Virus record (IMG/VR): IMGVR_UViG_3300046665_000548
Location: 372,001-436,000 of that record
DNA length: 64,000 bases
Direction: 5' to 3' (one strand)
Shown: positions 18,863 to 31,378 of the stretch, piece after piece
Numbering within the stretch: the stretch's first letter is position 1
How the letters are laid out: every line of letters begins with the position of its first letter
The notes under the pieces: model-generated
What the model was told of the DNA's origin: nothing
Databases searched by the model: none
The model's input: the letters and a program-made list of their open reading frames with translations, nothing else
Translations under genes and position numbers: made by a program

Positions 18863-19693
18863 TTAATCTGGCGTAACAGGAGCAGGCTTTCGCTTTGGTG
18901 GGGGACCGCGACGACGCTTTACGGGCGGTGCCGAAGCATCTGTGCCCATGCGGTACTCCATCTCGTTCTCTATCTGACGAGTGTAGGAAGGCGTGACGCC
19001 TGCCATGATCAAGATATCATCGCGGATGTTCTGATTACGGCGTTCTACGTTCAAAACTCGCGTGAAGCAGTTCTGAATGGTCGTGGTGTAGAACGCGAAA
19101 GGATTGTCTCCCTTGGATTCGTCAAATTGAAGACCAACCTGGGAAAGTTGAAGAAGCGCATGTGAACGCATTTCATCAACATACGTGTAACCTCGCCAGT
19201 TACCGCGACGAGAGTAACGGTCCACCAGCATCATGAACATCATAGCGAGAGCCGAAGAGATCGCGCCCTTGTCGAGACAGAATGCGCCTTCTTCGGTTAT
19301 GCCCTTCCAATGTGATCGTCCAACCTCGATCAGCTTGTCATCGCGAATGATGAAATGCTTGAAGGGAGGAAAATTTGTCCGGGCGTACGACACGTCGGTA
19401 TTGCGCGCTTTGCGCTTTCGATCCGGGTCGAGGGGAATGTGTTCGTGAGTCATCAACCGAATCACCAGATCATCCTTGGTGTAGTCGGTCCTAACAACTT
19501 CGCCTGCTTTCACCTTCGGATTGCACTTCTTGGTGAGGGCTCTTTCGATAAGCTCGGGTGTAATCGCGTCACGTGTGATGGCAATTACGTCAAAGTTCGC
19601 ATACTCGGGCTTTTCGAAATAGCAAAAGGTCGTCTTGCTTTTATGAATTTCACGAAGCAGGTCTTTGTTGGTAATATACTTTGGTTTTTGCAT
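18863..19693 (-). CDS. Late transcription sigma factor (T4 gp55-like)
   Basis: YITNKDLL..., RGNWRGYTYVDEMRSHAL, FDESKGDNPFAFYTT. Confidence 0.85.
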   Translation of the reverse strand: MQKPKYITNKDLLREIHKSKTTFCYFEKPEYANFDVIAITRDAITPELIERALTKKCNPKVKAGEVVRTDYTKDDLVIRLMTHEHIPLDPDRKRKARNTDVSYARTNFPPFKHFIIRDDKLIEVGRSHWKGITEEGAFCLDKGAISSALAMMFMMLVDRYSRRGNWRGYTYVDEMRSHALLQLSQVGLQFDESKGDNPFAFYTTTIQNCFTRVLNVERRNQNIRDDILIMAGVTPSYTRQIENEMEYRMGTDASAPPVKRRRGPPPKRKPAPVTPD

Positions 19694-19824
19694 GACCTCA
19701 GGGGGTTCGAGATTCCTAGTTATAATCTGGAAGTAGTTGTATTCGCAAATTTATTTTTTGGTTTGACTATTTCGTCTAAAGTAATGCCAAGTAAACACCC
19801 AAGTTTAAGGACGGCTAAATATTT

Positions 19825-20358
19825 ATGAGCAAGGAAACCAAACGAGTTGTGTTTGCATGCGGGAGGTTTAACCCTCCTACGGCGGGCCACCGGAAACTCT
19901 TAGAAGAGATGAGGGCGGTTGCTGGAGACGCGGAGATAAGACTCTTCGCTACCCAGACCCACGATCCAGAGAGGAATCCATTGTCTCCTGAGACGAAGCT
20001 CGGTTTTTTACGCCGAGCCTTTCCAGGAACCGACATCCAGCTTGCGACGAATGCGTTCGATGCCGCGAAGATGTTGTCCAAGGAAGGTTTCGCTGAGGCC
20101 ACATTGATTGTGGGTGAAGACCGAGAAGCTTTGGCTCGTAACGTAGTCCGCTATGCGGCTGACCTTGGCTTAGAGAGCGTGCAATTTCACGTAGTCTCAA
20201 GACAAGACGGCGACGCCAGCGCTACTGCGATGCGCCAAGCAGCCGCTTCTGGAGACATCAAGGCATTTGCAGAACTGTGTCCTAGTGAGGATTCTGTTCT
20301 GAAGGACGACATGTACCGGGCCGTTCGGCTTGGGATGGGAGATAGATGGCAGAGCTAA
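19825..20358 (+). CDS. Cytidyltransferase-like (HxGH nucleotidyltransferase fold) protein
   Basis: GRFNPPTAGHRKL, RNPLSPETK, VGEDR, SATAMR; TAAATA 3 nt upstream. Confidence 0.8.
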   Translation: MSKETKRVVFACGRFNPPTAGHRKLLEEMRAVAGDAEIRLFATQTHDPERNPLSPETKLGFLRRAFPGTDIQLATNAFDAAKMLSKEGFAEATLIVGEDREALARNVVRYAADLGLESVQFHVVSRQDGDASATAMRQAAASGDIKAFAELCPSEDSVLKDDMYRAVRLGMGDRWQS

Positions 20359-21098
20359 TCGGGCCGAATACATTTCAGGACACATTTGGCGTTGAAGGGC
20401 AAGGCTATGGCTACGTAGGTTACCAGGATAATGGGACTCAGACGGATGTGGGAGCCCAAGCTAGAACTTATGCTAGCCAGCAGGACACCGCCAAGGAAGA
20501 CTTCCGAGTCAGGCTCGCAGCCCAGACTCGAACTCAATATAATGGCGAGCTTCTGTCCCCGTTGCTAAACACGGGTGGGCTTCTCTTCCCGTATACGCCG
20601 ACGATTACAGTTTCGCAGGAAGTTGATTATGCGAACATGCAAATGGTCCACAGCAACATGGACTATTATTCATACTCGCGTACCCCGAACACGACGATTT
20701 CGCTGGCCGGAAAATTCACAGTTCAGAACCAGAAGGAAGGGCTCTACGCACTCGCCGCGATCCACTTCTTGAAAACAATGTCAAAGATGTACTTTGGTGA
20801 GAAAGATGCAGGCAATAATCTTGCCGGTCTCCCGCCGCCGATCCTTCTACTGAAGGGTTACGGCAAGTACATGTTCAATAACATTCGAGTCATCCTGAAA
20901 TCCCACAACTACACATTTGAAGAGAGCGCGCAGACCGTCGCCGTCAATACGATAAGCGGCGGCATAGTTCGTCTGCCCGCACTGTTTACGCTATCCTGCT
21001 CTCTCGTGTCCCAGCCTACTACAAAGATGATGCGTAAGGATTTTTCGCTCGATAGCTTTCGTTCGGGTGAACTCCTCAAGACCGGAGGTTACATCTAA
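20346..21098 (+). CDS. Baseplate tube-like protein (gp48/gp54-like)
   Basis: FPYTPTI..HSN..SY..ISLAGKFT..HFLKT..PPPILLLKGYG pattern; located ahead of LysM, hub and gp5. Confidence 0.65.
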   Translation: MAELIGPNTFQDTFGVEGQGYGYVGYQDNGTQTDVGAQARTYASQQDTAKEDFRVRLAAQTRTQYNGELLSPLLNTGGLLFPYTPTITVSQEVDYANMQMVHSNMDYYSYSRTPNTTISLAGKFTVQNQKEGLYALAAIHFLKTMSKMYFGEKDAGNNLAGLPPPILLLKGYGKYMFNNIRVILKSHNYTFEESAQTVAVNTISGGIVRLPALFTLSCSLVSQPTTKMMRKDFSLDSFRSGELLKTGGYI

Positions 21099-21403
21099 TG
21101 CAGGTTAAGTACGCTTCTGCGTCCCCGTATGCTGACACTCCACAGTCGCCATGGAGGATCAAGAATTACGTTCACAGAGCAATCCCTGACAGCGCTTCGG
21201 ATAGGCTCATCACGGTCAAAACGAAGCACGAGTATCGCCCCGATCTGCTAAGTTTTGAACTCTACAACACTCCGGAATATTGGTGGGTTTTCATGGTGCG
21301 CAACATGGACATCATTCGTGATCCCATCTGGGACCTCAAGGCTGGAATCACAATCACTGCGCCGTCATTGACGGCAATTCAGGCAGCCAAAGGACAGCCA
21401 TAA
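21098..21403 (+). CDS. Baseplate wedge protein (gp53/LysM-like)
   Basis: EYRPDLLSFELYNTPEYWWVFMVRNMDIIRDPIWDLKAG; TAATG coupling. Confidence 0.8.
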   Translation: MQVKYASASPYADTPQSPWRIKNYVHRAIPDSASDRLITVKTKHEYRPDLLSFELYNTPEYWWVFMVRNMDIIRDPIWDLKAGITITAPSLTAIQAAKGQP

Positions 21404-23487
21404 TGGCAGAAACAGATATCGTCATTGCCAATAATGGGCCAGCGGACATCCCATACAGCAAGTCAACGACTGGCTCCCAATACAATTTCATTGAAAATCC
21501 ACTAAGTCCGTTTGCCCAGGTGGCCTATCACATAACCCTATACGCGATAGGAGATACGGCGACCTATAGCAGTGAGGATGACGGAAAGATCATCATCGCT
21601 GAGAGCGGCGTGACGGGCTATAATATCAAAGATTTGATCATTGACGGGCTTGTTACACCGAACGAGAAATCGCGCGGTACTGTATCCACGAAGATTACGA
21701 TGACCATAACTGAACCGGCCGGGACGAGTTTTCTCGACTCGATGTATGATGCGGTGCTTGCTGTCGGCGGTAGCAACTGGCAAAAGTCCGTTTATCGTCT
21801 TGAGGTCCGATTCAAAGCGTATGACGAGCAGGGAAACATTATCCATTGGCTCGATTCTTCCAATGGCATGCCGAAGGACGGCAAGTGGACGTGGAAGATC
21901 ATGATTGGCGATGTCGAGACGAACCTCGATGCCAGCGGAGCCACGTACAGAATCACTGCCCGACCAATTGAAGAAACGGTGCCGTGGGATGCACCTTCCT
22001 CGACAACTCTTAAGGCTACTACGATTGGCGAATTCTTTACTGCGCTAAAAGACCACTTGAATGGCGCAGATCAGAAGAAGACCAACACCTCTCCGTTGGA
22101 TGAACCGACCATCATCTACGATATCAACGTGCATTCTTTGGCAGATGGTACTGACCCGAAAAGCTGGAGTGTCCTTGGTAAATGGCAAAATCCTGACTTT
22201 CATCCGATTTTCCACAAGGGATTCAAGACTGATGATCGAGACAAAGGAGTGTTCAACCTGACCCGAGGTGAAAAACTTCCTGATATCGTTGATGCCATCT
22301 TTGCCGTTTCTGAAGAAGCTCAGGCGCGCATCAAGAACTCTCAGAAGCCAATCGTTGACCCTAACGACCATGGGGACGGTAATTACCGAGACGCGCTCGT
22401 GTTCCGTATCTATGCGGAAACAGAGATTACCGGATATGACTACGTGAACCAGAATTTGAAGATGAAGGTCACTTATCATATCAAGCCGTTCCAGGCTCAA
22501 AACAATTGGCTTCTCTCTAATGAGACTACCAAACCGGGCAACGGGCAGGCTGCGCTCAATATCGTCAATGGCTACGAGGGTCTGAAGAAACGGTACGAAT
22601 ACCTCTACACGGGCTTGAACACGGAGGTCATCCACCTCGACCTAAAGTTCAATTTCCAGTTTAGCGCTTCAATGCCGCGAGGCAATGGCGACAACTACTA
22701 CAGTGATAACGTTGTGTGGCATGCTCGCATGCCGTCTGATCCCAAGGCAGAAGCCGACAAGCGGAAACAAAAACAAGACGACGAGAACGCCCAAAAGGAC
22801 AGAGACAATCGCGAAAATCTCATCAGGATCAAAAACGGCCTGGAAATGCCGGACCTTACTGCGGAAGAAACGCAGGCTTTGACGAACGAATATCGAACTA
22901 TCGCTACTGCACTACAAGCCGAGTACGAGAACGAAGCCAGAGCCAGACGTGCCCAGTATGCCGGAATCCGTTACGCCGAAGATATCACTGACCGCGCCAC
23001 AAATACGGCCATCGTCAGCACGGGTCAAAGCTCTGGAGAAGGTGCTCGACAGGCGAACCTAAAAGGTCATACAGGCCAGCGGCATCGGGCTAAGTCGGTA
23101 TATGGGGCGTTGCTGGATCAGCTTTACGCGCCAACCAAGGAACTGACGCTGAAGATCAAAGGTGATCCGTTCTGGCTCGGAGACTATCAAACAGTAATGG
23201 TCAACGGAAACCAAGATAAACAACTTGTCGATTGGTCACGTGGGCATGTAGGATTTGTTCTTTACTTTAGATATCCGAAGGGCATGACCGATGAGGGTGT
23301 TCCGATCATTTGGGAAGACAGCCAGGTATTCAATACAGTATATCTACCTTGGTACGTTCAACATTCCTTTGCTAACGGAGCCTTTACTCAAACGTTGAGA
23401 GCACGCCGACTGAGAGCCGTCACAAGAGAAGACGTTGCTCCATTGGCGAGCGTTCAGCCTACTGATAGCCCATTTCCAGGATACTGA
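21403..23487 (+). CDS. Baseplate hub protein (gp27-like)
   Basis: Position between LysM and gp5 genes; LKIKGDPFWLG and VQHSFANGAFTQTLRARR near the C-terminus. Confidence 0.7.
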   Translation: MAETDIVIANNGPADIPYSKSTTGSQYNFIENPLSPFAQVAYHITLYAIGDTATYSSEDDGKIIIAESGVTGYNIKDLIIDGLVTPNEKSRGTVSTKITMTITEPAGTSFLDSMYDAVLAVGGSNWQKSVYRLEVRFKAYDEQGNIIHWLDSSNGMPKDGKWTWKIMIGDVETNLDASGATYRITARPIEETVPWDAPSSTTLKATTIGEFFTALKDHLNGADQKKTNTSPLDEPTIIYDINVHSLADGTDPKSWSVLGKWQNPDFHPIFHKGFKTDDRDKGVFNLTRGEKLPDIVDAIFAVSEEAQARIKNSQKPIVDPNDHGDGNYRDALVFRIYAETEITGYDYVNQNLKMKVTYHIKPFQAQNNWLLSNETTKPGNGQAALNIVNGYEGLKKRYEYLYTGLNTEVIHLDLKFNFQFSASMPRGNGDNYYSDNVVWHARMPSDPKAEADKRKQKQDDENAQKDRDNRENLIRIKNGLEMPDLTAEETQALTNEYRTIATALQAEYENEARARRAQYAGIRYAEDITDRATNTAIVSTGQSSGEGARQANLKGHTGQRHRAKSVYGALLDQLYAPTKELTLKIKGDPFWLGDYQTVMVNGNQDKQLVDWSRGHVGFVLYFRYPKGMTDEGVPIIWEDSQVFNTVYLPWYVQHSFANGAFTQTLRARRLRAVTREDVAPLASVQPTDSPFPGY

Positions 23488-23499
23488 TAAAAGGACGAT

Positions 23500-24579
23500 A
23501 TGCCCGAAATTAATACACAAAATCCCGATTTCGTCACAGAAACATCAGATGGTAGGCCCCGCGAGACTGCCATCTACGTTGGTATTGTTACTGACAACGA
23601 AGATGAACAGCGGATGGGGCGTCTAAAAGTCTACATTCCCGAGCTTGGCGGAAGCCACGGTAACGAGAATACGCATTACATCGTTTCTTATGCTTCTCCG
23701 TTTGCTGGCGCGACTCCGGCAGGTGCCACAAAGAAGCATGAGGACGGCGGTGACGAGATGTCCGGCTCACAGAAGAGCTATGGCTTTTGGATGGTCCCCC
23801 CGGACAAAGACAACGAGGTGCTTGTCTGTTTCGCCAACGGTGACACGCGCCGTGGTTTCTGGTTCGCTTGTCTTTACCAGCAATTCATGAACCACATGGT
23901 GCCGGGTCTCGCGCTCAATAAGGTAACCAATCCGGAGGTCAATCATCTCGCCCCTGTGGTGGAATACAACAAAAAAGATGACGTGCATGCGGCCGACCCA
24001 TGGGACCCGAAGCGTCCTATTTTTGAGCCTTTGCACAACGGCCTTCGTAAGCAGGGCCTCTACACCGATCCGGAACGCGGTCCGTCCACAACGTCTGCCC
24101 GCCGCGAGGCACCATCAAAGGTGTTCGGCTTTATCACGCCGCGCGGTAATACTATGCACATTGATGATAACCCCGAGAACGAATTCGTTCGTTTCCGCAC
24201 CAGGAGCGGTGTGCAGCTTTTGATCCACGAAACCGGTGGCTACATCTACATGATTTCCAAAAACGGAAATTCTTGGCTTCAGGTTTCCGATGAGGGAATC
24301 GATATGTACTCGAAGAAGGGCGTCAACATTCGAGGTGAAGGCGGTCTCAATGTGCACTCTGACAAGAACGTCAATCAGCATTCAGTAGCGGGTCGCCATC
24401 GTCGTTCAGGTAAGGCAACGACCGAGCACAGTGATGGTCAGAAGAGGACGACGGCTGACAAGAAGATCAAAGTCGATTCGGCAGTTAAAAAGGAAGACCA
24501 GAGCAACCCAGCAGGAGGCGGTGGCGGTCAAGATGCTGGCACCCCGGCGAGCGGCGGCTTCGGAAGCAACATCGGCTAA
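23500..24579 (+). CDS. Baseplate spike gp5-like protein (OB fold plus beta-helix; no lysozyme domain seen)
   Basis: YVGIVTDNEDEQRMGRLKVYIPEL, GFWMVPPDKDNEVLVCFANGD, RFRTRSGVQLLIHETGGYIY. Confidence 0.85.
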   Translation: MPEINTQNPDFVTETSDGRPRETAIYVGIVTDNEDEQRMGRLKVYIPELGGSHGNENTHYIVSYASPFAGATPAGATKKHEDGGDEMSGSQKSYGFWMVPPDKDNEVLVCFANGDTRRGFWFACLYQQFMNHMVPGLALNKVTNPEVNHLAPVVEYNKKDDVHAADPWDPKRPIFEPLHNGLRKQGLYTDPERGPSTTSARREAPSKVFGFITPRGNTMHIDDNPENEFVRFRTRSGVQLLIHETGGYIYMISKNGNSWLQVSDEGIDMYSKKGVNIRGEGGLNVHSDKNVNQHSVAGRHRRSGKATTEHSDGQKRTTADKKIKVDSAVKKEDQSNPAGGGGGQDAGTPASGGFGSNIG

Positions 24580-24593
24580 GCCCTAAATAGTCG

Positions 24594-27149
24594 ATGCAGT
24601 ACATTGTCGTCACAGCAAAGGGTGCTGATCAACAGCATGTCCTTGACCTCTTCGCCGCGAATTCAGCGATCATCCTGAATGATTACACTGACTTGTTCCC
24701 GGATCACTGGCACGTGTCAGTGGACGACACAGCGGCTATTGAAGCGGACGCGGATGTGCTTTCTGTTGTGCGTGACGATACTCGGATCACGCTTGCTGCA
24801 AGGCAGTCAATGGTGGGTGCGCTAAATGCTGCCTTTTTCGGAGTCAGTCCCAGTCTGACGATGCATTTCACCCGAGGCAATTGGGGATTGGCGCGCATCT
24901 CGGCTGAGACCAACGCGCTCACCGCATCGCAATACGGGCAAGTCGATCTTAGCTATTCGTACACGCGGGACGGCACAGGAGTAGACATATATGTGATCGA
25001 CGGTGAGACAATGTACCCGTCGTCTCTCGGTGCCAACACGACCGAGGGTGGCCCGGCGTCCCGTATCACGGTCATTTTTGACGATGCCGCAAGTATTAGT
25101 GGCATCAATTACGGCGATGAGTCTCCGCAAGTTCTACACGCGGATACGTGCGCGGGCTTTGCGGCTGGTTACGTTCAAGGTCCAGCAAAAGGGGCCAAGC
25201 TCTACTATTCTCGCGCGTTCCACAACAATAGCGCCAGTGTAAATTCCGTTCTTGCCGCGATGGCAGCGTGTTTGGCTCACCACAATCGTAAGAAGGAACT
25301 TGGGGTGAATCGCCCATCGCTTGTGAACATGAGCTTTGGAGCGCTTAGCGATATGTCTTGGTACATGTCGGCGCTCGATGCGCTTACACAAGCCGGAATG
25401 GTCATGTTCATCGCTGCTGGTAACGAGGGAGCGAACCTGGACATAGTTGACTATGCCCCGGCAGAATACGAACCAGCCATCACAGTTGGTGCGTGCCAGA
25501 TCAACGATTCTATATGGCCGTCATCCAACTATGGATCGATCATCGATGTATTCGCTCCTGGAAATGCACTGGGAACGTTCTACGGCCTAGAGTCGTCAAT
25601 GGGCGGCGTCTCCTCTTCTGGTTCCGGCACGAGCTACGCCACTCCTTTCGTGCTCGGAGTGAGCGCCTTGTACCTTCAGGGTAAGGACATCGGGCGCGGA
25701 CCAGAGCAGCAGCAGGAAGTGCGAGATTTTATCGTAAACAATGCATTCATCGATAAGCTAACGCTCGGCTCGGCGGCTGCCACATCTCCAAATCGGTTGT
25801 TGAACAGTTTCTATACTGCGCCAACGAATGCAAAAATAACCTGGGTTGGTCCGGACATCGATTCGTCTGCCGTCAATGACCTTACGGTTATAACATCGCT
25901 TGCTTCGCCCCTTCAGGCCACATCTAGTGATGGCCGTCCGGTGCGGTTCACCCTTGTTGGCGGTCGCCTTCCGTGGGGCTACAGCATCAATGAAACGACG
26001 GGAAGCTTCGTTGGCAATCCGAATACGTTCTGGGGATCATGGAGCGGTTCGTTTACAGTGCGAGCTTGGGTGCAAACAGATTCCGGAGAGCCGGTCATCG
26101 AACAATACCGGGTCATCCGGTATGACAACATAGCGGGAACGCGAGGCGGGTCTATCACCGGAAATACCGCGCTGTTTCGTTGGCACGTTCCGACGACGAT
26201 GCCGAGCATAATGTTCGGCATTCCTTCGCGACAGCGTTTCTTGACACAGGACAACAGCGGAGGCGAACGGTTTGCTACGTTCGTAAGCGGAACCATTCCT
26301 CCCGGTATGTCATACAACAATTCCACTGGTGTTCTTTCAGGTACTCCGACGAGTTCTGGAATGTATCAGTTTACTCTTGGCGTCGTATATACGACAGGTT
26401 CACCACAGGACACCAGGACATACACGCTGCAAGTCCTCGGCTATCCAAGCATCACGGCCTCACAGACGATCTCTGCCTTTCAGTCCGTTGGTGCTGTTAA
26501 TGAGCTAACAATGGCGACTGGACAGTCAACAATGGCCGCCTATACCCAGGCCGCCAATGCTGTACGGATGATTACCTCACTTGCAACTGGGCAATCAATG
26601 GTGGGTGCATTCACTCAATCTGCGAATGCTGTCAAATCGATCAAATGGGCACTGCCAACAACACGCGGGAAAGTAACTGATGTGCCGGGCTCCCACCGTC
26701 TTGGCGGGCGCACTCACACGGGCTACGATATAGCCGTTGATTCAGGAACATTCGTTTATGCTGCGGGAAACGGTGTAGTTACGCACGCCGTAACAAAGAT
26801 CGACCGTAATCCGGCCGGACGACGTGTCTACATAAAGCACGAAGATGGCTCAACGACTCGATATTTGCATTTGAGCAAAGTAGACACGTTCGCCGGAGTT
26901 GAGGTGAAGGCCGGAGACTATCTAGGTCTCTCTGGTAGCAGCGGTCCGTTTGATGACGGAGACTACGCTCCGCATTTGCACTTTGAACGAAGGGACGCCA
27001 TCACTGACGAGCTACTACCGGCCTTCGGTGATTCGCGGTGGGCTGATAAATTCAAGGTCGGCTTCACGTGGGATATCGGTCTCAACGATGACGAGGCAGA
27101 AGCAATAGCCCAGGCAAAAGCTGACGCTCAAACCAACGACGAATATTAA
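24594..27149 (+). CDS. Multidomain subtilisin-like (S8) protease + putative Ig domains + M23 metallopeptidase
   Basis: S8: YVIDG, HADTCAG, AAGNE, GTSYATP. Ig: PPGMSYNNSTGVLSGTPT. M23: HTGYD, YLHL, PHLHFE. TAAATA 4 nt upstream. Confidence 0.88.
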   Translation: MQYIVVTAKGADQQHVLDLFAANSAIILNDYTDLFPDHWHVSVDDTAAIEADADVLSVVRDDTRITLAARQSMVGALNAAFFGVSPSLTMHFTRGNWGLARISAETNALTASQYGQVDLSYSYTRDGTGVDIYVIDGETMYPSSLGANTTEGGPASRITVIFDDAASISGINYGDESPQVLHADTCAGFAAGYVQGPAKGAKLYYSRAFHNNSASVNSVLAAMAACLAHHNRKKELGVNRPSLVNMSFGALSDMSWYMSALDALTQAGMVMFIAAGNEGANLDIVDYAPAEYEPAITVGACQINDSIWPSSNYGSIIDVFAPGNALGTFYGLESSMGGVSSSGSGTSYATPFVLGVSALYLQGKDIGRGPEQQQEVRDFIVNNAFIDKLTLGSAAATSPNRLLNSFYTAPTNAKITWVGPDIDSSAVNDLTVITSLASPLQATSSDGRPVRFTLVGGRLPWGYSINETTGSFVGNPNTFWGSWSGSFTVRAWVQTDSGEPVIEQYRVIRYDNIAGTRGGSITGNTALFRWHVPTTMPSIMFGIPSRQRFLTQDNSGGERFATFVSGTIPPGMSYNNSTGVLSGTPTSSGMYQFTLGVVYTTGSPQDTRTYTLQVLGYPSITASQTISAFQSVGAVNELTMATGQSTMAAYTQAANAVRMITSLATGQSMVGAFTQSANAVKSIKWALPTTRGKVTDVPGSHRLGGRTHTGYDIAVDSGTFVYAAGNGVVTHAVTKIDRNPAGRRVYIKHEDGSTTRYLHLSKVDTFAGVEVKAGDYLGLSGSSGPFDDGDYAPHLHFERRDAITDELLPAFGDSRWADKFKVGFTWDIGLNDDEAEAIAQAKADAQTNDEY
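26505..26642 (+). repeat. Two tandem 69-bp (23-aa) degenerate repeats in the Ig-M23 linker
   Basis: LTMATGQSTMAAYTQAANAVRMI / TSLATGQSMVGAFTQSANAVKSI; a third weaker copy precedes them. Confidence 0.75.
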
Positions 27150-27160
27150 GGACATTCATC

Positions 27161-27454
27161 ATGGCAGGTAAAAACAAGGTAGAGCCGGACGAAAGCGATC
27201 CGGTCGAGTACACTGGTGCCGAGGCTCAATCCGGTAAGGAAGATGGGCGCAAGGAAGCGGAAGAGCCGCCGAAGCCGGAAGAGCACGCTAACACGGAAGG
27301 CGAGCCCGGTAAATGGAAGCAGAAAAAGAAAAAGTCAATCGTGACGCGATTGCCATGCCATGAACCATTCGCTGGTCATCCCAAGACGAAACTCAAGAAC
27401 CCTCGTGATGGCGGTAATGGTCGCGGCGATGAAGGTCGTAATCAAAAGAAGTAA
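27161..27454 (+). CDS. Small charged protein carrying a gp5-associated SIVTRLPCHEPF motif
   Basis: 97 aa; AAGGA SD. The motif resembles the R-x-P-x-HEP-(W/F) segment I recall from the C-terminal part of gp5 in related jumbo phages. Confidence 0.5.
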   Translation: MAGKNKVEPDESDPVEYTGAEAQSGKEDGRKEAEEPPKPEEHANTEGEPGKWKQKKKKSIVTRLPCHEPFAGHPKTKLKNPRDGGNGRGDEGRNQKK

Positions 27455-27802
27455 TCAATCCGTTCCGTAAAAACGGATGCGAAACATGAGAAGATCGTGT
27501 TCTCGCTTGAAGCTGATCCAGAACGGAACGCTTTCGGCATTAGGATTTCCAGTAAGTATGCGATGCGCGTCAACTTGTTGGATAGGCGGGTACTGCACTC
27601 GGTATTGATCGTCCTCGTCCTGTAGGCCGTCGAGCCATTCGCGGAGTTGCAGGATAGGTTCGAGATTGATCTTCGAAAATGCTCTGCGACTTTCGCCCTC
27701 CCGATACAAGAACAAAAATGGCGGTACGCGAATCGCGAACCGTTCTTTTCGGATGCACCAATCCCAGGCGTTGCAATCTAGTGGTGATTTTTTGAGAGGC
27801 AT
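27455..27802 (-). CDS. Small motif-family protein
   Basis: ISFKREHDLLMFRIRFY at the C-terminus; GGAGG SD. Confidence 0.6.
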   Translation of the reverse strand: MPLKKSPLDCNAWDWCIRKERFAIRVPPFLFLYREGESRRAFSKINLEPILQLREWLDGLQDEDDQYRVQYPPIQQVDAHRILTGNPNAESVPFWISFKREHDLLMFRIRFYGTD

Positions 27803-27813
27803 TGCCTCCCATA

Positions 27814-29271
27814 TCAGAACATTCTTACGCCGTGAAGAGCTTGGAACCGTAGAGCATCATCCCAAGTATTCACCAATGGCTCGCCCTTGATGTTCAAGCT
27901 AGTATTCAACAGCATTGGGCATCCGGTAGCTTTATACCAATCCATCAGAAGGCCATAAAACATTGGGTTCTGATCCTCAGTGAGGGTCTGGACGCGGGCC
28001 GTGTTGTCGTAGTGTGATATGGCGGGAAACAGATCGGGTCTCCTCACGGGGGCTACGAACTGCATGTAAGGGCTCGTCGCGACGGGCATCTCAAAATAAT
28101 CGTTGGCGAACTGCTCTAGGATAATCGGAGCGAACGGCCGGAACGGTTCGCGCTTCTTGATCCGATTCACGCGATCTTTCGTCGCCGGGCCGCGAGGGTC
28201 GGTGAGGAGAGAACGATTCCCTAGCGCCCGAGGGCCGAATTCGGCCCGGCCATTGGCCACGCCTACGACCTCTCCCGCCAAAAGAGCCTCCAGGCAGCCC
28301 TGGCGGTCGAATGGGCGGGCTATGTCGTGGCCCAGGTACGCAGAGCGCCAGTTCAATTGCTGGCGCTGGTAGGCCGCCACAGCGCCAATGCTGGAGCCAG
28401 CGTCGCCAGGGTTTGGCATGATCCAGATATTCTGGAATGCTCCTCCGGTCGCGATGCGAGAATTCGCAACACAATTTAGCGCCACGCCGCCTGCCAGCAC
28501 GAGATTAGGCGAACCGGTTTGCAAGGAAGCCCAGTCGATGAGGCTGATGAGATATTCTTCGGTGACTTCCTGGATAGAGGCGGCGATGTTCGCGTTGTCG
28601 GTGATCTCTGGACGCCAATCCCGTATTCCGCGATGAACGTTTTGCTTCAGACGAAATTCCGGCAGCCGTGCCTTCTGAACGAAATCCTGGCGGATGATGT
28701 CCGCGTAGATGGGTTTGCCAAGTGCGGCCATACCCATCAGAATGTATTCTTCCTCGTTCGGTTTGAAGCCGATCCGTTGAGTAAAGGCGCTGTACAGAAG
28801 ACCGAGACTGTGGGGATAATTCTGAGACCAAAGCTCGGTTAGATCATCGCCCTCGCCGTGCCACATGCTGATGGTGTTCCATTCGCCAATCGCATCAATG
28901 ACGAGAACAATCGCGTCAGAAAATCCACTTGTGAAATAACCAGCCGCAGCATGGCTTTCGTGGTGGCCGACATATTTGACCGGCGCGGTAAGACCATGTT
29001 GCTTGAGATAGCTCGCGCCGTCCGTGCGCATCACGCTGTCATATTGACCCGCGTATAGCTTCCGAGTGCGCTTCAGAAACGGCCTCTCATACCAAACGAT
29101 GAGATCGGGTTCGCCATGGACGCGAGCAGCGCTGATCAGGTCTGGGTGAAGATGGGCATCGTTCTTGACACGACTGTATCGTTCAGAATGGGAAGCGAAC
29201 AGAATTTCCTGATCTTTGATAACGGCTAGGCTTGCGTCGTGCTCGTTAGCGCTTATGCCGTAGATGACCAT
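27814..29271 (-). CDS. O-carbamoyltransferase (NodU/CmcH family)
   Basis: HDAS, SERYSRVKND, HHESHAA, LAGGVALNCVAN, GRAEFGPRALGNRS, RPFAP, LLNTSLN. Confidence 0.93.
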   Translation of the reverse strand: MVIYGISANEHDASLAVIKDQEILFASHSERYSRVKNDAHLHPDLISAARVHGEPDLIVWYERPFLKRTRKLYAGQYDSVMRTDGASYLKQHGLTAPVKYVGHHESHAAAGYFTSGFSDAIVLVIDAIGEWNTISMWHGEGDDLTELWSQNYPHSLGLLYSAFTQRIGFKPNEEEYILMGMAALGKPIYADIIRQDFVQKARLPEFRLKQNVHRGIRDWRPEITDNANIAASIQEVTEEYLISLIDWASLQTGSPNLVLAGGVALNCVANSRIATGGAFQNIWIMPNPGDAGSSIGAVAAYQRQQLNWRSAYLGHDIARPFDRQGCLEALLAGEVVGVANGRAEFGPRALGNRSLLTDPRGPATKDRVNRIKKREPFRPFAPIILEQFANDYFEMPVATSPYMQFVAPVRRPDLFPAISHYDNTARVQTLTEDQNPMFYGLLMDWYKATGCPMLLNTSLNIKGEPLVNTWDDALRFQALHGVRMF

Positions 29272-30095
29272 TTCTTCTCCAGTGCATCCTTCGCCATATC
29301 GAACACAAACTTGGCGTAAGCCGCATGTGCTCTTGGGCCAGGATGCATCATATCTCTCCCATAATCTCCCTGGGCAATGAATGACGGAAAGCGGTCAACG
29401 ACCATGTTATCAGTCCTAACGTAATCATAGAGAAACGGTTCTATCTCGTTAATGGGCTGAAAATCTCCCCAAATCCACGGGATGCCTGCTCCTCGGAGAA
29501 CCAATTCGATGAATTGCCAGTTCATCACCCAATTGTAGAAATCATTAGCATCTGTCTGAAGAGTAATGAGTGCCTTCTGCTCGTTGACAAAGAAATTAGT
29601 TCGAAGGACGTTGGGGATTAAAGCAATTCGATGATGGTAGTTGTTATAGTATTGGCGGCGCTGCATGCCTGGGAACAATACCACGACGAGTTCGGGTTTG
29701 ATAATATCAACGGTTTGATAGACAACCTGTGCCATTGCATCGCTACCATAGCCGGGCAAACCCAAATTGTGTTGTTCAAATTCTACGTTAAAGTGCTTAG
29801 ACAACATATCGGTCACGATAGACGTGTACACGGACTCGTACGGAACACCAATTCCGGTCGTGAACGAACACCCAACAAACATAAGTTTTGGTTTAGAAGA
29901 TTTCGGATCGAATTCCATGGATCGGTAGCCTCGGCTATTCACAGTATAGCCGAAATCGGTTGGCTTATATAAGTTGCCTTTGGCCTTATAGGTCTCTTTG
30001 GCGTCGCTCGGCCACCATGTAATTGTCCTGCCATAATCGCGAACGTTACCGGCCATCGCCTCTGGTATCTGGTCTTTAATCCAGAAGCGGGTCAT
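29253..30095 (-). CDS. SGNH/GDSL-like hydrolase or acyltransferase
   Basis: VGCSFTTG (block I), NLGLPGYG (block II), DMMHPG (block V). Confidence 0.7.
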   Translation of the reverse strand: MTRFWIKDQIPEAMAGNVRDYGRTITWWPSDAKETYKAKGNLYKPTDFGYTVNSRGYRSMEFDPKSSKPKLMFVGCSFTTGIGVPYESVYTSIVTDMLSKHFNVEFEQHNLGLPGYGSDAMAQVVYQTVDIIKPELVVVLFPGMQRRQYYNNYHHRIALIPNVLRTNFFVNEQKALITLQTDANDFYNWVMNWQFIELVLRGAGIPWIWGDFQPINEIEPFLYDYVRTDNMVVDRFPSFIAQGDYGRDMMHPGPRAHAAYAKFVFDMAKDALEKKWSSTA

Positions 30096-30145
30096 ATTCT
30101 TGTTTACCGCAAGGTGATGCATGAGACTTCCGGTTAAGGGCCTAC

Positions 30146-31378
30146 TTATTTATTGCTGTCCAGTATGGCCCAAAATTCAGGAAACACAGCGGCGTAACTT
30201 TCCTTTCGGTATTTGTCATGCCGATCTACGGTCTGGAGAAACGAGTCTAGGAGATTTTTTCCTGGGGCGCGCAGCAGGCTAATAATGCCGTCAAGCGGCT
30301 CGAACAAAATCGAACACTCGTCCACGCTCATTCCAGAAAGCTTTACGGCAATCGCTTCTTTGACTGGTTGTGGTAGGTTCATGGCGGTCATGTTGTCTGG
30401 ATTGTAGAGCATGTTTACCCAAACCCGCACGTTGAGATCACGAAAATACTGGACGTACTCAGGCAGGTAAAAAATGTTCAAGCTCGATACGGTGAGACAC
30501 ACATGGACATCCTTCGGCCCCATGGTTTCCAGGAAACGCTTCATGTTTTGCTCAACTAGCGGCCACTTAGCCGGATATCTCTGGTATTCGAACTGTTCTC
30601 CTGTGCCATCGATAGAGAGCATGATGTCTACGCGCTTGAAATGCGGGAATAGGTTTTCGATGGCGTCTTCCGGATAGATCGTTCCGTTCGTGTTGTAGTG
30701 AACGGTCTGGTTCTTCGACCATCCGTTATCAACCGCGTGTCGTAGAAGCTCAAAATGACGTTGAATGAGAAACGGCTCTCCGCCGTAAATCTCAAAGTGC
30801 TCAATATGCGGAAGCCATTCTTCAAGATCAGTCCAAAATCGCGGATTGTGCTCGTGCCAATTCATGAGCATCTTGCGTTCAAGCGGGAAACTAGCCGTGG
30901 ACAAGTTCTTCGCCGCATTGGTGATCACGTCGCTGCCATAGATGTCGATGGTCTCTTTGATCCATTTCGAGGAAGAGCCAACCGAACAGATACGGCACTT
31001 GAGGTTGCAGAGATTTCCAAGCTTCAGGTCCAGGAAGATCGGCTGAAGCTCGTCCTCTGGGACACTCAGTACGGCTTCCACTTTATTCCACCAACGCTTG
31101 TTCTCTCGAATGCGCTTGGATGTCTTACCAGCGGCTTCTTCGCGCCAGCATGACGAACATGCGGGGTGCTTAGTTCCTGCTACGAGCGCGCCTCGGAGAT
31201 CACGAACTGACTTGGACTTCCATACGTCCGTCATGCTGTCGCGTGCCAGAGTGAACTTGGTGCCGTCTTCCTTCTCGAAGAAATGCGTGCTCATACAGCA
31301 GGGAGCCACAAACCCGTCAGCGCGAGCTTCCAGATGGATGAAAGGCAGGATGCAAAAGGTATCGCTTATAGTAGACAT
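30146..31378 (-). CDS. Radical SAM enzyme 1 (class A, N-terminal twitch/SPASM-like domain)
   Basis: FCILPF..CC..CSSC; CNLKCRIC; GGEP. Confidence 0.92.
   Translation of the reverse strand: MSTISDTFCILPFIHLEARADGFVAPCCMSTHFFEKEDGTKFTLARDSMTDVWKSKSVRDLRGALVAGTKHPACSSCWREEAAGKTSKRIRENKRWWNKVEAVLSVPEDELQPIFLDLKLGNLCNLKCRICSVGSSSKWIKETIDIYGSDVITNAAKNLSTASFPLERKMLMNWHEHNPRFWTDLEEWLPHIEHFEIYGGEPFLIQRHFELLRHAVDNGWSKNQTVHYNTNGTIYPEDAIENLFPHFKRVDIMLSIDGTGEQFEYQRYPAKWPLVEQNMKRFLETMGPKDVHVCLTVSSLNIFYLPEYVQYFRDLNVRVWVNMLYNPDNMTAMNLPQPVKEAIAVKLSGMSVDECSILFEPLDGIISLLRAPGKNLLDSFLQTVDRHDKYRKESYAAVFPEFWAILDSNK

What the first reader, a model, noticed from the sequence alone, without database searches (positions are those of the whole stretch)
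23500..27454. gp5 spike appears split, with a subtilase-Ig-M23 gene between its two parts
Seen: the gp5-like ORF ends in a Gly-rich tail with no lysozyme domain. An 851-aa S8-Ig-M23 gene with its own TAAATA promoter follows, then a 97-aa ORF containing SIVTRLPCHEPFAGH. From memory, an R-x-P-x-HEP-W motif lies within gp5 of related jumbo phages, after the beta-helix. Inference: an insertion divided gp5 and replaced the glycosidase with a combined protease and peptidoglycan endopeptidase, possibly for breaching an S-layer or proteinaceous coat.
Basis: partly seen in the sequence, partly recalled or inferred. Interest (0 to 1): 0.6.

Follow-up and report, generated by a model that had tools for sequence, protein, structure and literature searches.

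The report
Split phage spike with protease cargo
In this 608-kb phage the cell-puncturing spike gene exists as three separate genes (spike trunk, a unique protease plus cell-wall peptidase, and a 97-residue protein that keeps only a conserved linker motif); the split is old and under selection, not a fresh insertion.

Summary
ORF 23500-24579 is a gp5/VgrG-type spike trunk with no enzyme domain. ORF 24594-27149 is an intact subtilase-Ig-M23 protein. ORF 27161-27454 carries the S-I-x-x-R-x-P-x-HEP-W/F-x-x-H motif. Related jumbo phages have that motif inside gp5, after the beta-helix (profile E 2.8e-9; the only hit among 12,002 genome ORFs).

The interpretation needs revising. The split is not a recent insertion. 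Six related phages with a motif-less trunk form one clade (100/100 support). Their ancestral layout is trunk | small M23 gene | third gene (M15 peptidase, motif, lysozyme).

In the window and its sister contig L084, the third gene has shrunk to the 97-98-aa motif protein. It is still under purifying selection (dN/dS about 0.10). Only the window has the subtilase-Ig part. It is a complete copy of a phage S8-Ig gene, with its own TAAATA start signal, fused in frame onto the existing M23 gene.

No protein among 5.8 billion shares this architecture. Virion location, the binding partners and the protease target (the S-layer idea) remain untested.

This is a new variant of the known modular spike-cargo theme, of moderate interest.

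The parts
18863..19693 (-). gp55-like late sigma factor gene, divergent from the baseplate operon
   Evidence: phrog_12791 'sigma factor for late transcription', E 9e-79. Same position as Atu_ph07 gp694 and PA5oct gp346.
20346..23487 (+). Upstream baseplate and hub genes: virion structural protein (20346-21098), gp53-like wedge protein (21098-21403), 694-aa virion structural protein (21403-23487)
   Evidence: phrog_12050, phrog_7145/PF11246 and phrog_11190. Syntenic with Atu_ph07 gp696-698, all three detected in virions by MS.
23500..24579 (+). gp5N: central-spike trunk (OB domain plus short beta-helix, Gly-rich disordered tail aa 334-359). No enzyme domain and no motif.
   Evidence: PF04717 and phrog_13211. 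56% identical to Atu_ph07 gp699 over aa 9-294 and 87% to L084. The profile hits VgrG/CIS spikes in the PDB. dN/dS 0.046. Tail aa 337-359 has pLDDT below 50.
24583..24589 (+). CTAAATA start-associated (late-promoter-like) motif, 4 nt before the ATG of the S8-Ig-M23 gene
   Evidence: TAAATA is the hexamer most enriched upstream of long-ORF ATGs (36.7% against 4.4%), with spacing of 4-5 nt. It is absent at the equivalent junction of L084, where the two genes overlap as TAATG.
24594..26639 (+). S8-Ig module of the 851-aa protein: propeptide-like N-terminus (aa 1-95), proteinase-K-type subtilase (aa about 96-407), two Ig-like (He_PIG) regions (aa about 410-617), linker of about 65 aa (aa 618-682)
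   Evidence: PF00082 and PF05345. Catalytic D, H, S and N align to 5wsl and 4dzt. Aligns end to end, from Met1, with the 633-aa paralogue at genome 553179-555080 (38% identity). Absent from L084. Contigs about 95-97% identical occur in a root metagenome.
26640..27149 (+). M23 peptidoglycan endopeptidase module (aa 683-851). Orthologue of the stand-alone 155-174-aa M23 genes of relatives.
   Evidence: PF01551. 79% identical to the 172-aa gene of L084. 40-43% identical over full length to the M23 genes that sit between gp5N and gene 3 in L168, L169 and L170. dN/dS 0.10. It is the only M23 in the genome.
27161..27454 (+). ORF97: small, mostly low-complexity protein carrying the conserved spike-linker motif. 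Preceded by AAGGA at 27148-27152.
   Evidence: Profile E 2.8e-9, unique in the genome. Aligns to L004 gene 2 aa 173-231 (E 1e-9) and to gene 3 of L170 and L168. 83% identical to the 98-aa gene of L084. dN/dS 0.10, with pN 0.11 against pS 0.59. No Pfam or PHROG match.
27329..27385 (+). Motif core, K-S-I-V-T-R-L-P-C-H-E-P-F-A-G-H-P-K (aa 57-75). P65, H67, E68, P69 and H73 are invariant in 18 aligned sequences.
   Evidence: Alignment A1. Lowest pN within ORF97 (0.056). In a fused relative the motif lies in a linker with pLDDT below 50.

Best explanation
What the locus is. It is the central-spike and cargo module of a 608-kb T4/Rak2-related jumbo phage. The module has been taken apart into separate genes and then rebuilt.

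History (shown by comparison):
1. The ancestral gene was one polypeptide: OB domain, beta-helix, disordered linker with the S-I-x-x-R-x-P-x-HEP-W-x-x-H motif, then a variable cell-wall hydrolase.
2. In the common ancestor of a clade of six known phages the gene split after the helix. The resulting layout was trunk | small M23 endopeptidase | third gene (M15 peptidase, motif, lysozyme).
3. In the lineage of the window and L084 the third gene lost both enzyme domains. A 97-98-aa protein remains that keeps only the linker and motif, and it is still under purifying selection.
4. In the window alone, a complete copy of a phage S8-Ig gene landed exactly at the trunk/M23 junction, carrying its own TAAATA-N4-ATG start signal. 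It fused in frame to the M23 gene and produced the 851-aa protein.

Mechanism (inferred):
- The gp5N trimer forms the spike shaft.
- The S8-Ig-M23 protein is late-expressed cargo carried on or near the spike. It cuts peptidoglycan cross-links with M23 and an unidentified envelope protein with S8 during penetration.
- ORF97 is a disordered adaptor. Its short linear motif docks in trans onto a conserved spike or baseplate partner, the role it plays in cis in fused relatives.
For: Homology and uniqueness of the motif.

Sister contig L084, from an independent JGI sample, has the same three genes but an M23-only middle gene. Identities are 87%, 79% and 83%.

dN/dS is 0.046 for gp5N, 0.10 for M23 and 0.10 for ORF97.

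The junction is exact. L084 has TAATG. The window has TAA, then 14 nt including CTAAATA, then ATG and about 2.05 kb, and homology resumes at the second to third codon of M23.

Small stand-alone M23 genes are the closest relatives among 1.84 billion representatives. They lie between gp5N and an M15-motif-lysozyme gene in L168 and L170.

L004 has gp5N followed by an M15-motif-Lyz2 gene.

The six split forms are monophyletic with 100/100 support, sister to the fused L005 and L089.

The S8-Ig paralogue aligns from Met1 to aa 617 and sits beside a tail-fibre-like gene.

The S8 protein gp329 of Atu_ph07 was detected in virions and is encoded next to tail-fibre genes (PMC6102473 Table S5).

The cargo after the motif varies in relatives: M23, SLT, GH24 and Trypsin_2.

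The motif linker is predicted disordered in a fused relative.

A late sigma gene and the TAAATA enrichment are present.
Against: - No direct evidence places any of the three proteins in a virion. The phage is uncultured, and no RNA or protein data exist.
- The complex prediction of the gp5N C-terminus with ORF97 gave no verdict, so the partner of the motif is unknown.
- The wider family includes spikes without the motif (PA5oct, the Rak2-like fEgEco12, L006, L009). The motif is therefore not generally needed for spike assembly.
- Atu_ph07 gp699 itself was not among the MS-detected virion proteins.
- The S8-Ig-M23 protein could be a lysis enzyme instead, since it holds the only M23 in the genome.
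- Synonymous sites between the window and L084 are near saturation, so the dN/dS values are rough.
Confidence: 0.62

Rival explanations
1. One reading: one recent insertion of a complete S8-Ig-M23 gene cut an intact gp5 in this genome, and ORF97 is the left-over C-terminal fragment of gp5.
For: The gene order is trunk, enzyme gene, motif piece. The motif lies inside gp5 in many relatives. The enzyme gene has its own start signal.
Against: - The split is shared by six phages in one clade.
- M23 already sits between trunk and motif gene without S8 in L084, L168 and L170.
- ORF97 aligns to the middle of a separate third gene, M15-motif-lysozyme.
- ORF97 is under purifying selection, so it is not a decaying fragment.
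- About 120 aa of helix and linker present in relatives between the end of homology and the motif are missing from both pieces.
Confidence: 0.05
2. The 851-aa protein is not carried on the spike. It acts as a late lysis enzyme (an endolysin with an accessory protease) or as a released enzyme, and its position next to gp5N is only a historical remnant. ORF97 has some unrelated function.
For: - It holds the only M23 in the genome, and no Phage_lysozyme2 is present.
- It has its own late-type start signal.
- No attachment domain is recognisable in it.
- The complex test gave no support for any interaction.
Against: - The M23 gene keeps its place between trunk and motif gene in four lineages.
- In sister clades M23 is covalently part of gp5 (L008, L013).
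- An M15 peptidase candidate for lysis exists elsewhere in the genome, at 255931-256140.
- The related S8 protein of Atu_ph07 is virion-associated.
Confidence: 0.2
3. ORF97 forms the metal-binding tip of the spike, as a PAAR or apex analogue. In the trimer, the invariant His-Glu...His residues of three chains would bind an ion on the three-fold axis at the end of the shortened helix.
For: - P65, H67, E68, P69 and H73 are invariant.
- The window and L084 add a Cys next to them.
- The gp5N helix is shorter than in relatives.
- One of three complex runs scored 0.88.
Against: - The genome encodes a genuine PAAR protein at 573966-574193, E 8e-10.
- In fused relatives the motif lies 40-60 residues beyond the helix end, in a linker with pLDDT below 50.
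- In L004, L168 and L170 it sits between two enzyme domains.
Confidence: 0.1
4. Artefact: sequencing frameshifts or a chimeric assembly split one gene or created the S8-M23 fusion.
For: The sequence comes from a single metagenomic contig. No read set bridging the junctions was available.
Against: - The three ORFs are complete, in three frames, with proper starts and stops and no overlap that a frameshift could join.
- The same gene boundaries occur in L084 from another sample.
- The 851-aa frame is uninterrupted across the fusion point, with intact domains on both sides.
- Composition of the insert is typical of the genome.
Confidence: 0.03

Closest known systems
Atu_ph07 gp699 and Sinorhizobium phage Phosso protein 300 (annotated 'baseplate hub subunit and tail lysozyme')
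   Same: Same operon position, after the gp53-like and 690-aa structural genes. 50-56% identity over the OB/helix trunk. Same motif (R-M/L-P-T-HEPF) after the helix.
   Different: These are single polypeptides of 865 and 1044 aa with the cargo fused after the motif (Trypsin_2 in Atu_ph07). Here the trunk, the enzyme and the motif are three genes, and the order is enzyme then motif.
T4 gp5 cell-puncturing protein (with gp27 and the PAAR protein gp5.4)
   Same: OB domain (PF04717), a beta-helical shaft, the baseplate-hub gene neighbourhood, and a muralytic activity associated with the spike (T4 features from established knowledge).
   Different: T4 has a lysozyme between the OB domain and the helix, in one chain that is cleaved during assembly. 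Here no enzyme domain lies in the trunk, and the enzyme is a separate S8-Ig-M23 protein. The T4 family has no HEPW motif.
Type VI secretion 'evolved' VgrG spikes, and cargo effectors loaded through adaptors (established knowledge; the PDB spikes)
   Same: Same spike fold family (profile hits to VgrG chains). C-terminal enzyme domains are swapped freely (VgrG3-like C domain in L006). Both covalent and non-covalent cargo occur. A separate PAAR gene is present.
   Different: ORF97 matches no known adaptor family (DUF4123, DUF1795, DUF2169) and no Pfam family at all. An adaptor role for ORF97 is inferred only.
Split-clade relatives L168 and L170/L171 (Logan assemblies) and L004 (IMG/VR)
   Same: Motif-less trunk, a small M23 gene next to it, and the motif in a separate downstream gene.
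   Different: Their motif gene still carries M15 and lysozyme domains (411-456 aa). Their M23 gene has no S8-Ig extension. L004 has no M23 gene at that place, and the L170 trunk carries its own lysozyme.
Atu_ph07 gp329 and Phosso protein 119 (large S8 peptidases), and the window genome's own 633-aa S8-Ig paralogue
   Same: All are phage-encoded proteinase-K-type subtilases. gp329 is encoded next to tail-fibre genes and was detected in virions. The 633-aa paralogue lies beside a tail-fibre-like gene.
   Different: None is fused to a cell-wall hydrolase or lies in the spike operon. Identity is 25-27% (Atu_ph07, Phosso) and 38% (paralogue).

Membership tests
gp5/VgrG central spike | N-terminal OB-fold domain (PF04717) | tested here: met
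   PF04717 E 2.5e-11, above the curated cut-off. phrog_13211 E 5e-47.
gp5/VgrG central spike | Trimeric beta-helical shaft after the OB domain | tested here: inconclusive
   Profile positions 185-354 hit the helix regions of VgrG/CIS spike chains (7aef_q E 9.5e-10), and the AF2 monomer shows beta strands at aa 208-271 with pLDDT 63-81. The window protein itself does not reach PF10106 or PF22178, the overall model is poor (pTM 0.36), and the helix is about 70-90 residues shorter than in relatives. The trimer could not be modelled.
gp5/VgrG central spike | Encoded in the baseplate-hub operon | tested here: met
   Follows the gp53-like wedge gene and conserved virion structural genes, in the same order as in Atu_ph07, Phosso and PA5oct.
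T4-type gp5 specifically | Lysozyme domain within the spike polypeptide | tested here: not met
   No enzyme domain in the 359-aa protein. No Phage_lysozyme2 anywhere in the genome.
Subtilase S8 (proteinase K / aqualysin type) | Asp-His-Ser triad and oxyanion Asn in the conserved motifs | tested here: met
   PF00082 E 2.9e-23. V-I-D-G, L-H-A-D, A-A-G-N and G-T-S-Y-A-T-P align with the catalytic positions of 5wsl and 4dzt.
Subtilase S8 (proteinase K / aqualysin type) | N-terminal I9 propeptide | tested here: inconclusive
   Bacterial homologues carry PF05922. The window protein has a 95-aa N-terminal extension conserved in its paralogue, but PF05922 is not detected.
Peptidase M23 (LytM/lysostaphin type) | HxxxD and HxH zinc ligands in an M23 domain | tested here: met
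   PF01551 E 7.9e-20. H-T-G-Y-D and H-L-H are present and conserved in L084. PDB hits include 6jmx, ShyA, zoocin A and LytM.
PAAR / gp5.4 spike tip (considered for ORF97) | PAAR-repeat domain (PF05488) | tested here: not met
   ORF97 matches no Pfam family. The genome has a separate PAAR gene at 573966-574193.
Mobile insertion (intron, intein or homing-endonuclease cassette) splitting gp5 | Endonuclease or intein domains, or splice or frameshift geometry that would rejoin the halves | tested here: not met
   Only S8, He_PIG and M23 domains lie in the intervening gene. The three ORFs are in three frames, and no overlap allows a frameshift. The same split occurs without S8 in relatives.
Virion-associated cell-wall hydrolase (spike cargo) | Physical presence in the particle | not testable with these tools
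   The phage is uncultured, and no RNA or proteome exists. Only the conserved gene position and fused relatives support it.

The most novel reading that the evidence does not exclude
The R-x-P-x-HEP-W-x-x-H element is an undescribed, autonomous docking module of jumbo-phage spikes. It works in cis in fused spikes and, as the 97-aa ORF97, in trans. That would make ORF97 a new kind of phage spike adaptor, analogous to type VI secretion adaptors. It would recruit a unique virion-borne dual peptidase (subtilase plus M23) that digests both a protein layer and the peptidoglycan of the host envelope during penetration.
Probability: 0.25. Interest if true: 0.7.

Novelty: new variant of a known kind. 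Interest (0 to 1): 0.5.

Why it matters
Spike proteins with exchangeable enzyme heads are known from T4-like phages and from type VI secretion. What is rarely seen is the natural dissection of such a spike into separate genes.

Here related phages show the same modules fused, split in two, split in three, reduced and re-fused. This amounts to a natural domain-deletion experiment. It singles out a 15-20-residue motif that is kept under selection even after every enzyme domain around it has been lost. The motif has no Pfam or PHROG match, no solved structure, and nothing in the literature searched here.

The motif is a concrete target for binding and structural work in the cultured relatives Atu_ph07 and Phosso.

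The S8-Ig-M23 fusion has no counterpart among 5.8 billion proteins. If it is virion-borne, it would be a candidate phage enzyme aimed at envelope proteins as well as murein. That would be of interest for host-range biology and for enzybiotic design.

Tried and rejected
- Complex prediction of the gp5N C-terminus (aa 225-359, three copies) with ORF97 (aa 40-97, three copies): no verdict, scores 0.88, 0.00, 0.00. It is evidence neither for nor against binding.
- AF2 monomer of gp5N: mean pLDDT 56.6 and pTM 0.36. This was too poor for a fold search, so none was run.
- PDB profile search with the motif region: no hit at E up to 10.
- ESM Atlas features for ORF97: nothing usable.
- Literature searches for the motif, for jumbo-phage spike structures and for PA5oct late promoters: nothing relevant to this clade.
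- tblastn of ORF97 and of a 70-aa motif region against cultured phages: no match. The motif is too short for that database size.
- Origin of the M23 from the gp5-fused M23 domains of sister clades: rejected. None of the 36 best M23 relatives carries PF04717. The best are small stand-alone M23 genes of the split clade, and many of the others are bacterial M56-M23 proteins.
- Recent foreign origin of the S8-Ig part: not supported. Its GC and GC3 are typical of the genome.
- Programmed frameshift joining the 851-aa ORF to ORF97: the frames overlap by 25 nt with a -1 relation, but no slippery heptamer is present (read by eye).
- Terminator-like hairpin on the minus strand inside ORF97 (27352-27336): not conserved in L084, and such hits occur at chance frequency.
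- Sequencing runs: one root metagenome holds only short contigs of the S8-Ig part, and none bridges a junction.
Each piece was aligned by reference on its own.

Full report
**Setting.** The window is bases 372001-436000 of a 607,744-bp IMG/VR virus record rated complete. The finding lies in a plus-strand late operon that starts beside a divergent gp55-like late sigma gene (18863-19693, phrog_12791, E 9e-79). The operon runs through a cytidylyltransferase, a virion structural protein, a gp53-like wedge protein and a 694-aa structural protein. The same order is found in Agrobacterium phage Atu_ph07, Sinorhizobium phage Phosso and Pseudomonas phage PA5oct.

**Checking the observation.**
- ORF 23500-24579 (359 aa) has the gp5/VgrG OB domain (PF04717, E 2.5e-11). 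It matches only the N-terminal part of phrog_13211 'baseplate hub subunit and tail lysozyme'.
- It is 56% identical to Atu_ph07 gp699 over aa 9-294, after which homology stops. The last 25 residues are Gly-rich and predicted disordered.
- ORF 24594-27149 (851 aa) has Peptidase_S8, He_PIG and Peptidase_M23 domains. The subtilase Asp, His, Ser and oxyanion Asn align with keratinase 5wsl and aqualysin 4dzt. The M23 HxxxD and HxH ligands are present.
- ORF 27161-27454 (97 aa) has no Pfam or PHROG match but contains S-I-V-T-R-L-P-C-H-E-P-F-A-G-H.
- The three ORFs are in three frames. The middle ORF opens two codons after an in-frame stop that lies downstream of the gp5N stop. The 25-nt frame overlap at its 3' end has no slippery site. 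No frameshift or read-through can therefore join them.

**The motif.**
It lies inside the gp5 ORF of Atu_ph07 (aa 432-446) and Phosso (aa 425-446). It is also inside the gp5 ORF in about 35 of 80 related IMG/VR loci, in nearly all of them 400-500 residues from the N-terminus (915 in the long L016 protein).
- In an alignment of 18 sequences, P65, H67, E68, P69 and H73 (window numbering) are invariant.
- A profile of 21 such regions was built without the window and without L004. It finds ORF97 at E 2.8e-9. This is the single significant hit among all 12,002 six-frame ORFs of the genome; the next is E 0.24.
- The motif matches no chain in the PDB, and I found nothing on it in the literature.
- It is not universal. 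PA5oct, the Rak2-like E. coli phage fEgEco12 and several uncultured lineages lack it.
- After the motif, relatives carry different hydrolases: M23 (L008, L013), SLT (L005), GH24 lysozyme (L016) and Trypsin_2 (Atu_ph07).

**The split is old.**
- A word search with ORF97 found one relative, a 98-aa protein 83% identical.
- Its 6.8-kb contig, L084, comes from another JGI sample. It has gp5N (361 aa, 87% identical, same Gly-rich end), a 172-aa M23-only gene (79% identical to aa 683-851 of the window protein), the 98-aa gene, and the same convergent genes.
- Between the two phages dN/dS is 0.046 for gp5N, 0.10 for M23 and 0.10 for ORF97. For ORF97 pN is 0.11 against pS 0.59, and pN is lowest in the motif. 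ORF97 is therefore a selected gene, not debris. Synonymous sites are near saturation, so these ratios are approximate.
- The next relative, L004 (62% identical), has gp5N (487 aa) followed by an overlapping 456-aa gene with Peptidase_M15_4, the motif at aa 220 and Phage_lysozyme2. ORF97 aa 14-76 align to its aa 173-231 (E 1e-9).
- An exhaustive search with the M23 module (1.84 billion representatives) gave small stand-alone M23 proteins of 155-174 aa as its closest relatives.
- Looking up their contigs showed that in L168 and L170/L171 they sit directly after a motif-less gp5N. They are followed by a 411-450-aa gene with an M15 domain, the motif at aa 181-182 and (in L170) a lysozyme domain.
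- A maximum-likelihood tree of the trunk places all six motif-less forms (window, L084, L004, L088, L168, L170) in one clade with 100/100 support, sister to the fused L005 and L089.
- The parsimonious history is one fission giving trunk | M23 | M15-motif-lysozyme. L004 then lost M23, and the window/L084 lineage reduced the third gene to ORF97.

**The subtilase is the only recent event.**
- In L084 the gp5N stop overlaps the M23 start (TAATG). In the window the stop is followed by 14 nt containing CTAAATA, then an ATG and about 2.05 kb. Homology to L084 resumes at the second to third codon of M23.
- The inserted part aligns from its first Met to aa 617 with a 633-aa S8-Ig gene elsewhere in the same genome (553179-555080, 38% identity). 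That gene lies directly after a tail-fibre-like gene.
- The insert is thus a complete gene of a phage S8-Ig family that lost its stop and fused to M23 through a linker of about 65 aa.
- L084, L168, L169 and L170 all have the small M23, so the fusion is a gain in the window lineage.
- Its GC and GC3 are ordinary for the genome. At 38% identity, the resident paralogue is not the immediate donor.
- No protein among 5.8 billion combines S8 with M23 (only the 8000 best word-sharing candidates were scored).
- Short contigs about 95-97% identical to four stretches of the S8-Ig part occur in a root metagenome. None bridges a junction.

**The start signal.**
- TAAATA is the hexamer most enriched just upstream of long-ORF ATGs in this genome. 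77 of 210 sites (36.7%) lie there, against 4.4% background and 11-13% for Shine-Dalgarno-like hexamers. The spacing peaks sharply at 4-5 nt.
- The S8-Ig-M23 gene has it at 4 nt. The first gene of the operon (19825) has it at 3 nt.
- With a gp55-like sigma gene present, this resembles the T4 late promoter TATAAATA (established knowledge), placed so that transcripts would be nearly leaderless. That reading is inferred.
- The motif came in with the insert. L084 has none at that junction.

**How it probably works.**
- What is shown is the anatomy, the homologies, the selection and the order of events. The rest is inferred.
- The trunk belongs to the VgrG/gp5 spike family (PDB profile hits). A true PAAR gene lies elsewhere in the genome, so ORF97 is unlikely to be the tip.
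- In an AF2 monomer of a fused relative, the motif lies in a linker with pLDDT below 50 between a confident helix region and a confident M23 domain. This is the behaviour of a short linear motif that becomes ordered only on a partner.
- Its retention as a mini-gene after loss of both flanking enzymes suggests the docking itself matters. ORF97 could be an adaptor for the neighbouring M23 protein, or a structural element of the hub.
- The complex test with the trunk gave no verdict.
- Virion location of the dual peptidase is supported only indirectly. The M23 gene keeps its position, M23 is fused to gp5 in sister clades, and the S8 protein gp329 of Atu_ph07 was found in particles (PMC6102473).
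- The alternative, that it is a lysis enzyme, cannot be excluded, since it holds the only M23 in the genome.
- Nothing tests the S-layer idea. The host is unknown. The nearest cultured relatives infect Rhizobiaceae, and the only other sample holding the sequence is a root metagenome.

**Verdict.** This is a new variant of the modular spike-cargo theme with three points of interest: an undescribed conserved linker motif that survives as a free-standing gene, a well-resolved series from fused to split to re-fused forms, and a unique S8-Ig-M23 fusion.

**Compliance with the operators' notes.**
- I did not build the concatenated gp5N plus ORF97 sequence; each piece was compared by reference.
- The reads call stayed under 6,000 letters.

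Noticed in passing
whole genome; examples at window 19815-19821 and 24583-24589: TAAATA followed after 4-5 nt by ATG is the strongest start-associated hexamer in the genome (77 of 210 sites, against 4.4% background). It exceeds Shine-Dalgarno-like hexamers. This suggests T4-type late promoters that give nearly leaderless mRNAs.
   Followed up: partly
genome 553179-555080 (L085:7180-9081), outside the window: A free-standing 633-aa S8-Ig paralogue lies directly after a 477-aa tail-fibre-like gene (phrog_7389). It is a possible tail-associated protease, like the MS-detected gp329 of Atu_ph07.
   Followed up: partly
genome about 555848-556306 (L085:9849-10307): An Acb1 anti-CBASS gene (PF23474, E 2.5e-41) lies next to class Ia ribonucleotide reductase genes.
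   Followed up: no
window 27455-31378, minus strand: Convergent cluster right after ORF97: a 115-aa ORF, a carbamoyltransferase (27814-29271), a 289-aa ORF and a radical-SAM-like protein (30146-31378). The first three are conserved in L084. L170 has two radical-SAM genes and a ParA-like gene at the equivalent place. This may be a modification pathway.
   Followed up: no
genome 573966-574193 (L172): A PAAR-motif gene (PF05488, E 8.4e-10) lies about 175 kb from the spike trunk gene.
   Followed up: no
L170:4478-5989 and L004:4036-5499: Trunks of split-clade relatives carry their own extra C-terminal parts. L170 has a Phage_lysozyme2 domain without the motif. L004 has a 190-aa extension ending in a D-H-L-H-I-S-Y stretch that looks like an LAS/M15-type zinc site. 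Cargo modules move among all three genes of the locus.
   Followed up: partly
window 26500-26640 (aa 636-682 of the 851-aa protein): The linker between the Ig part and M23 contains two similar units of about 22 aa (A-T-G-Q-S-x-x-x-A-[YF]-T-Q-x-A-N-A-V). The DNA tandem-repeat finder does not report them.
   Followed up: no
window 27290-27460 against L084:1806-1980: The 3' half of ORF97 is 89% identical at the nucleotide level to L084, against 79% for the whole gene. The reason was not explored.
   Followed up: no
genome 255931-256140: An M15-type peptidase segment (40% identical to the M15 domain of L004 gene 2) lies elsewhere in the genome. It is a candidate endolysin.
   Followed up: no
PMC6102473 Table S5 (Atu_ph07): In the Atu_ph07 virion proteome, gp696, gp697, gp698 and the small lysozyme gp701 were detected, but the spike gp699 itself was not listed.
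   Followed up: no
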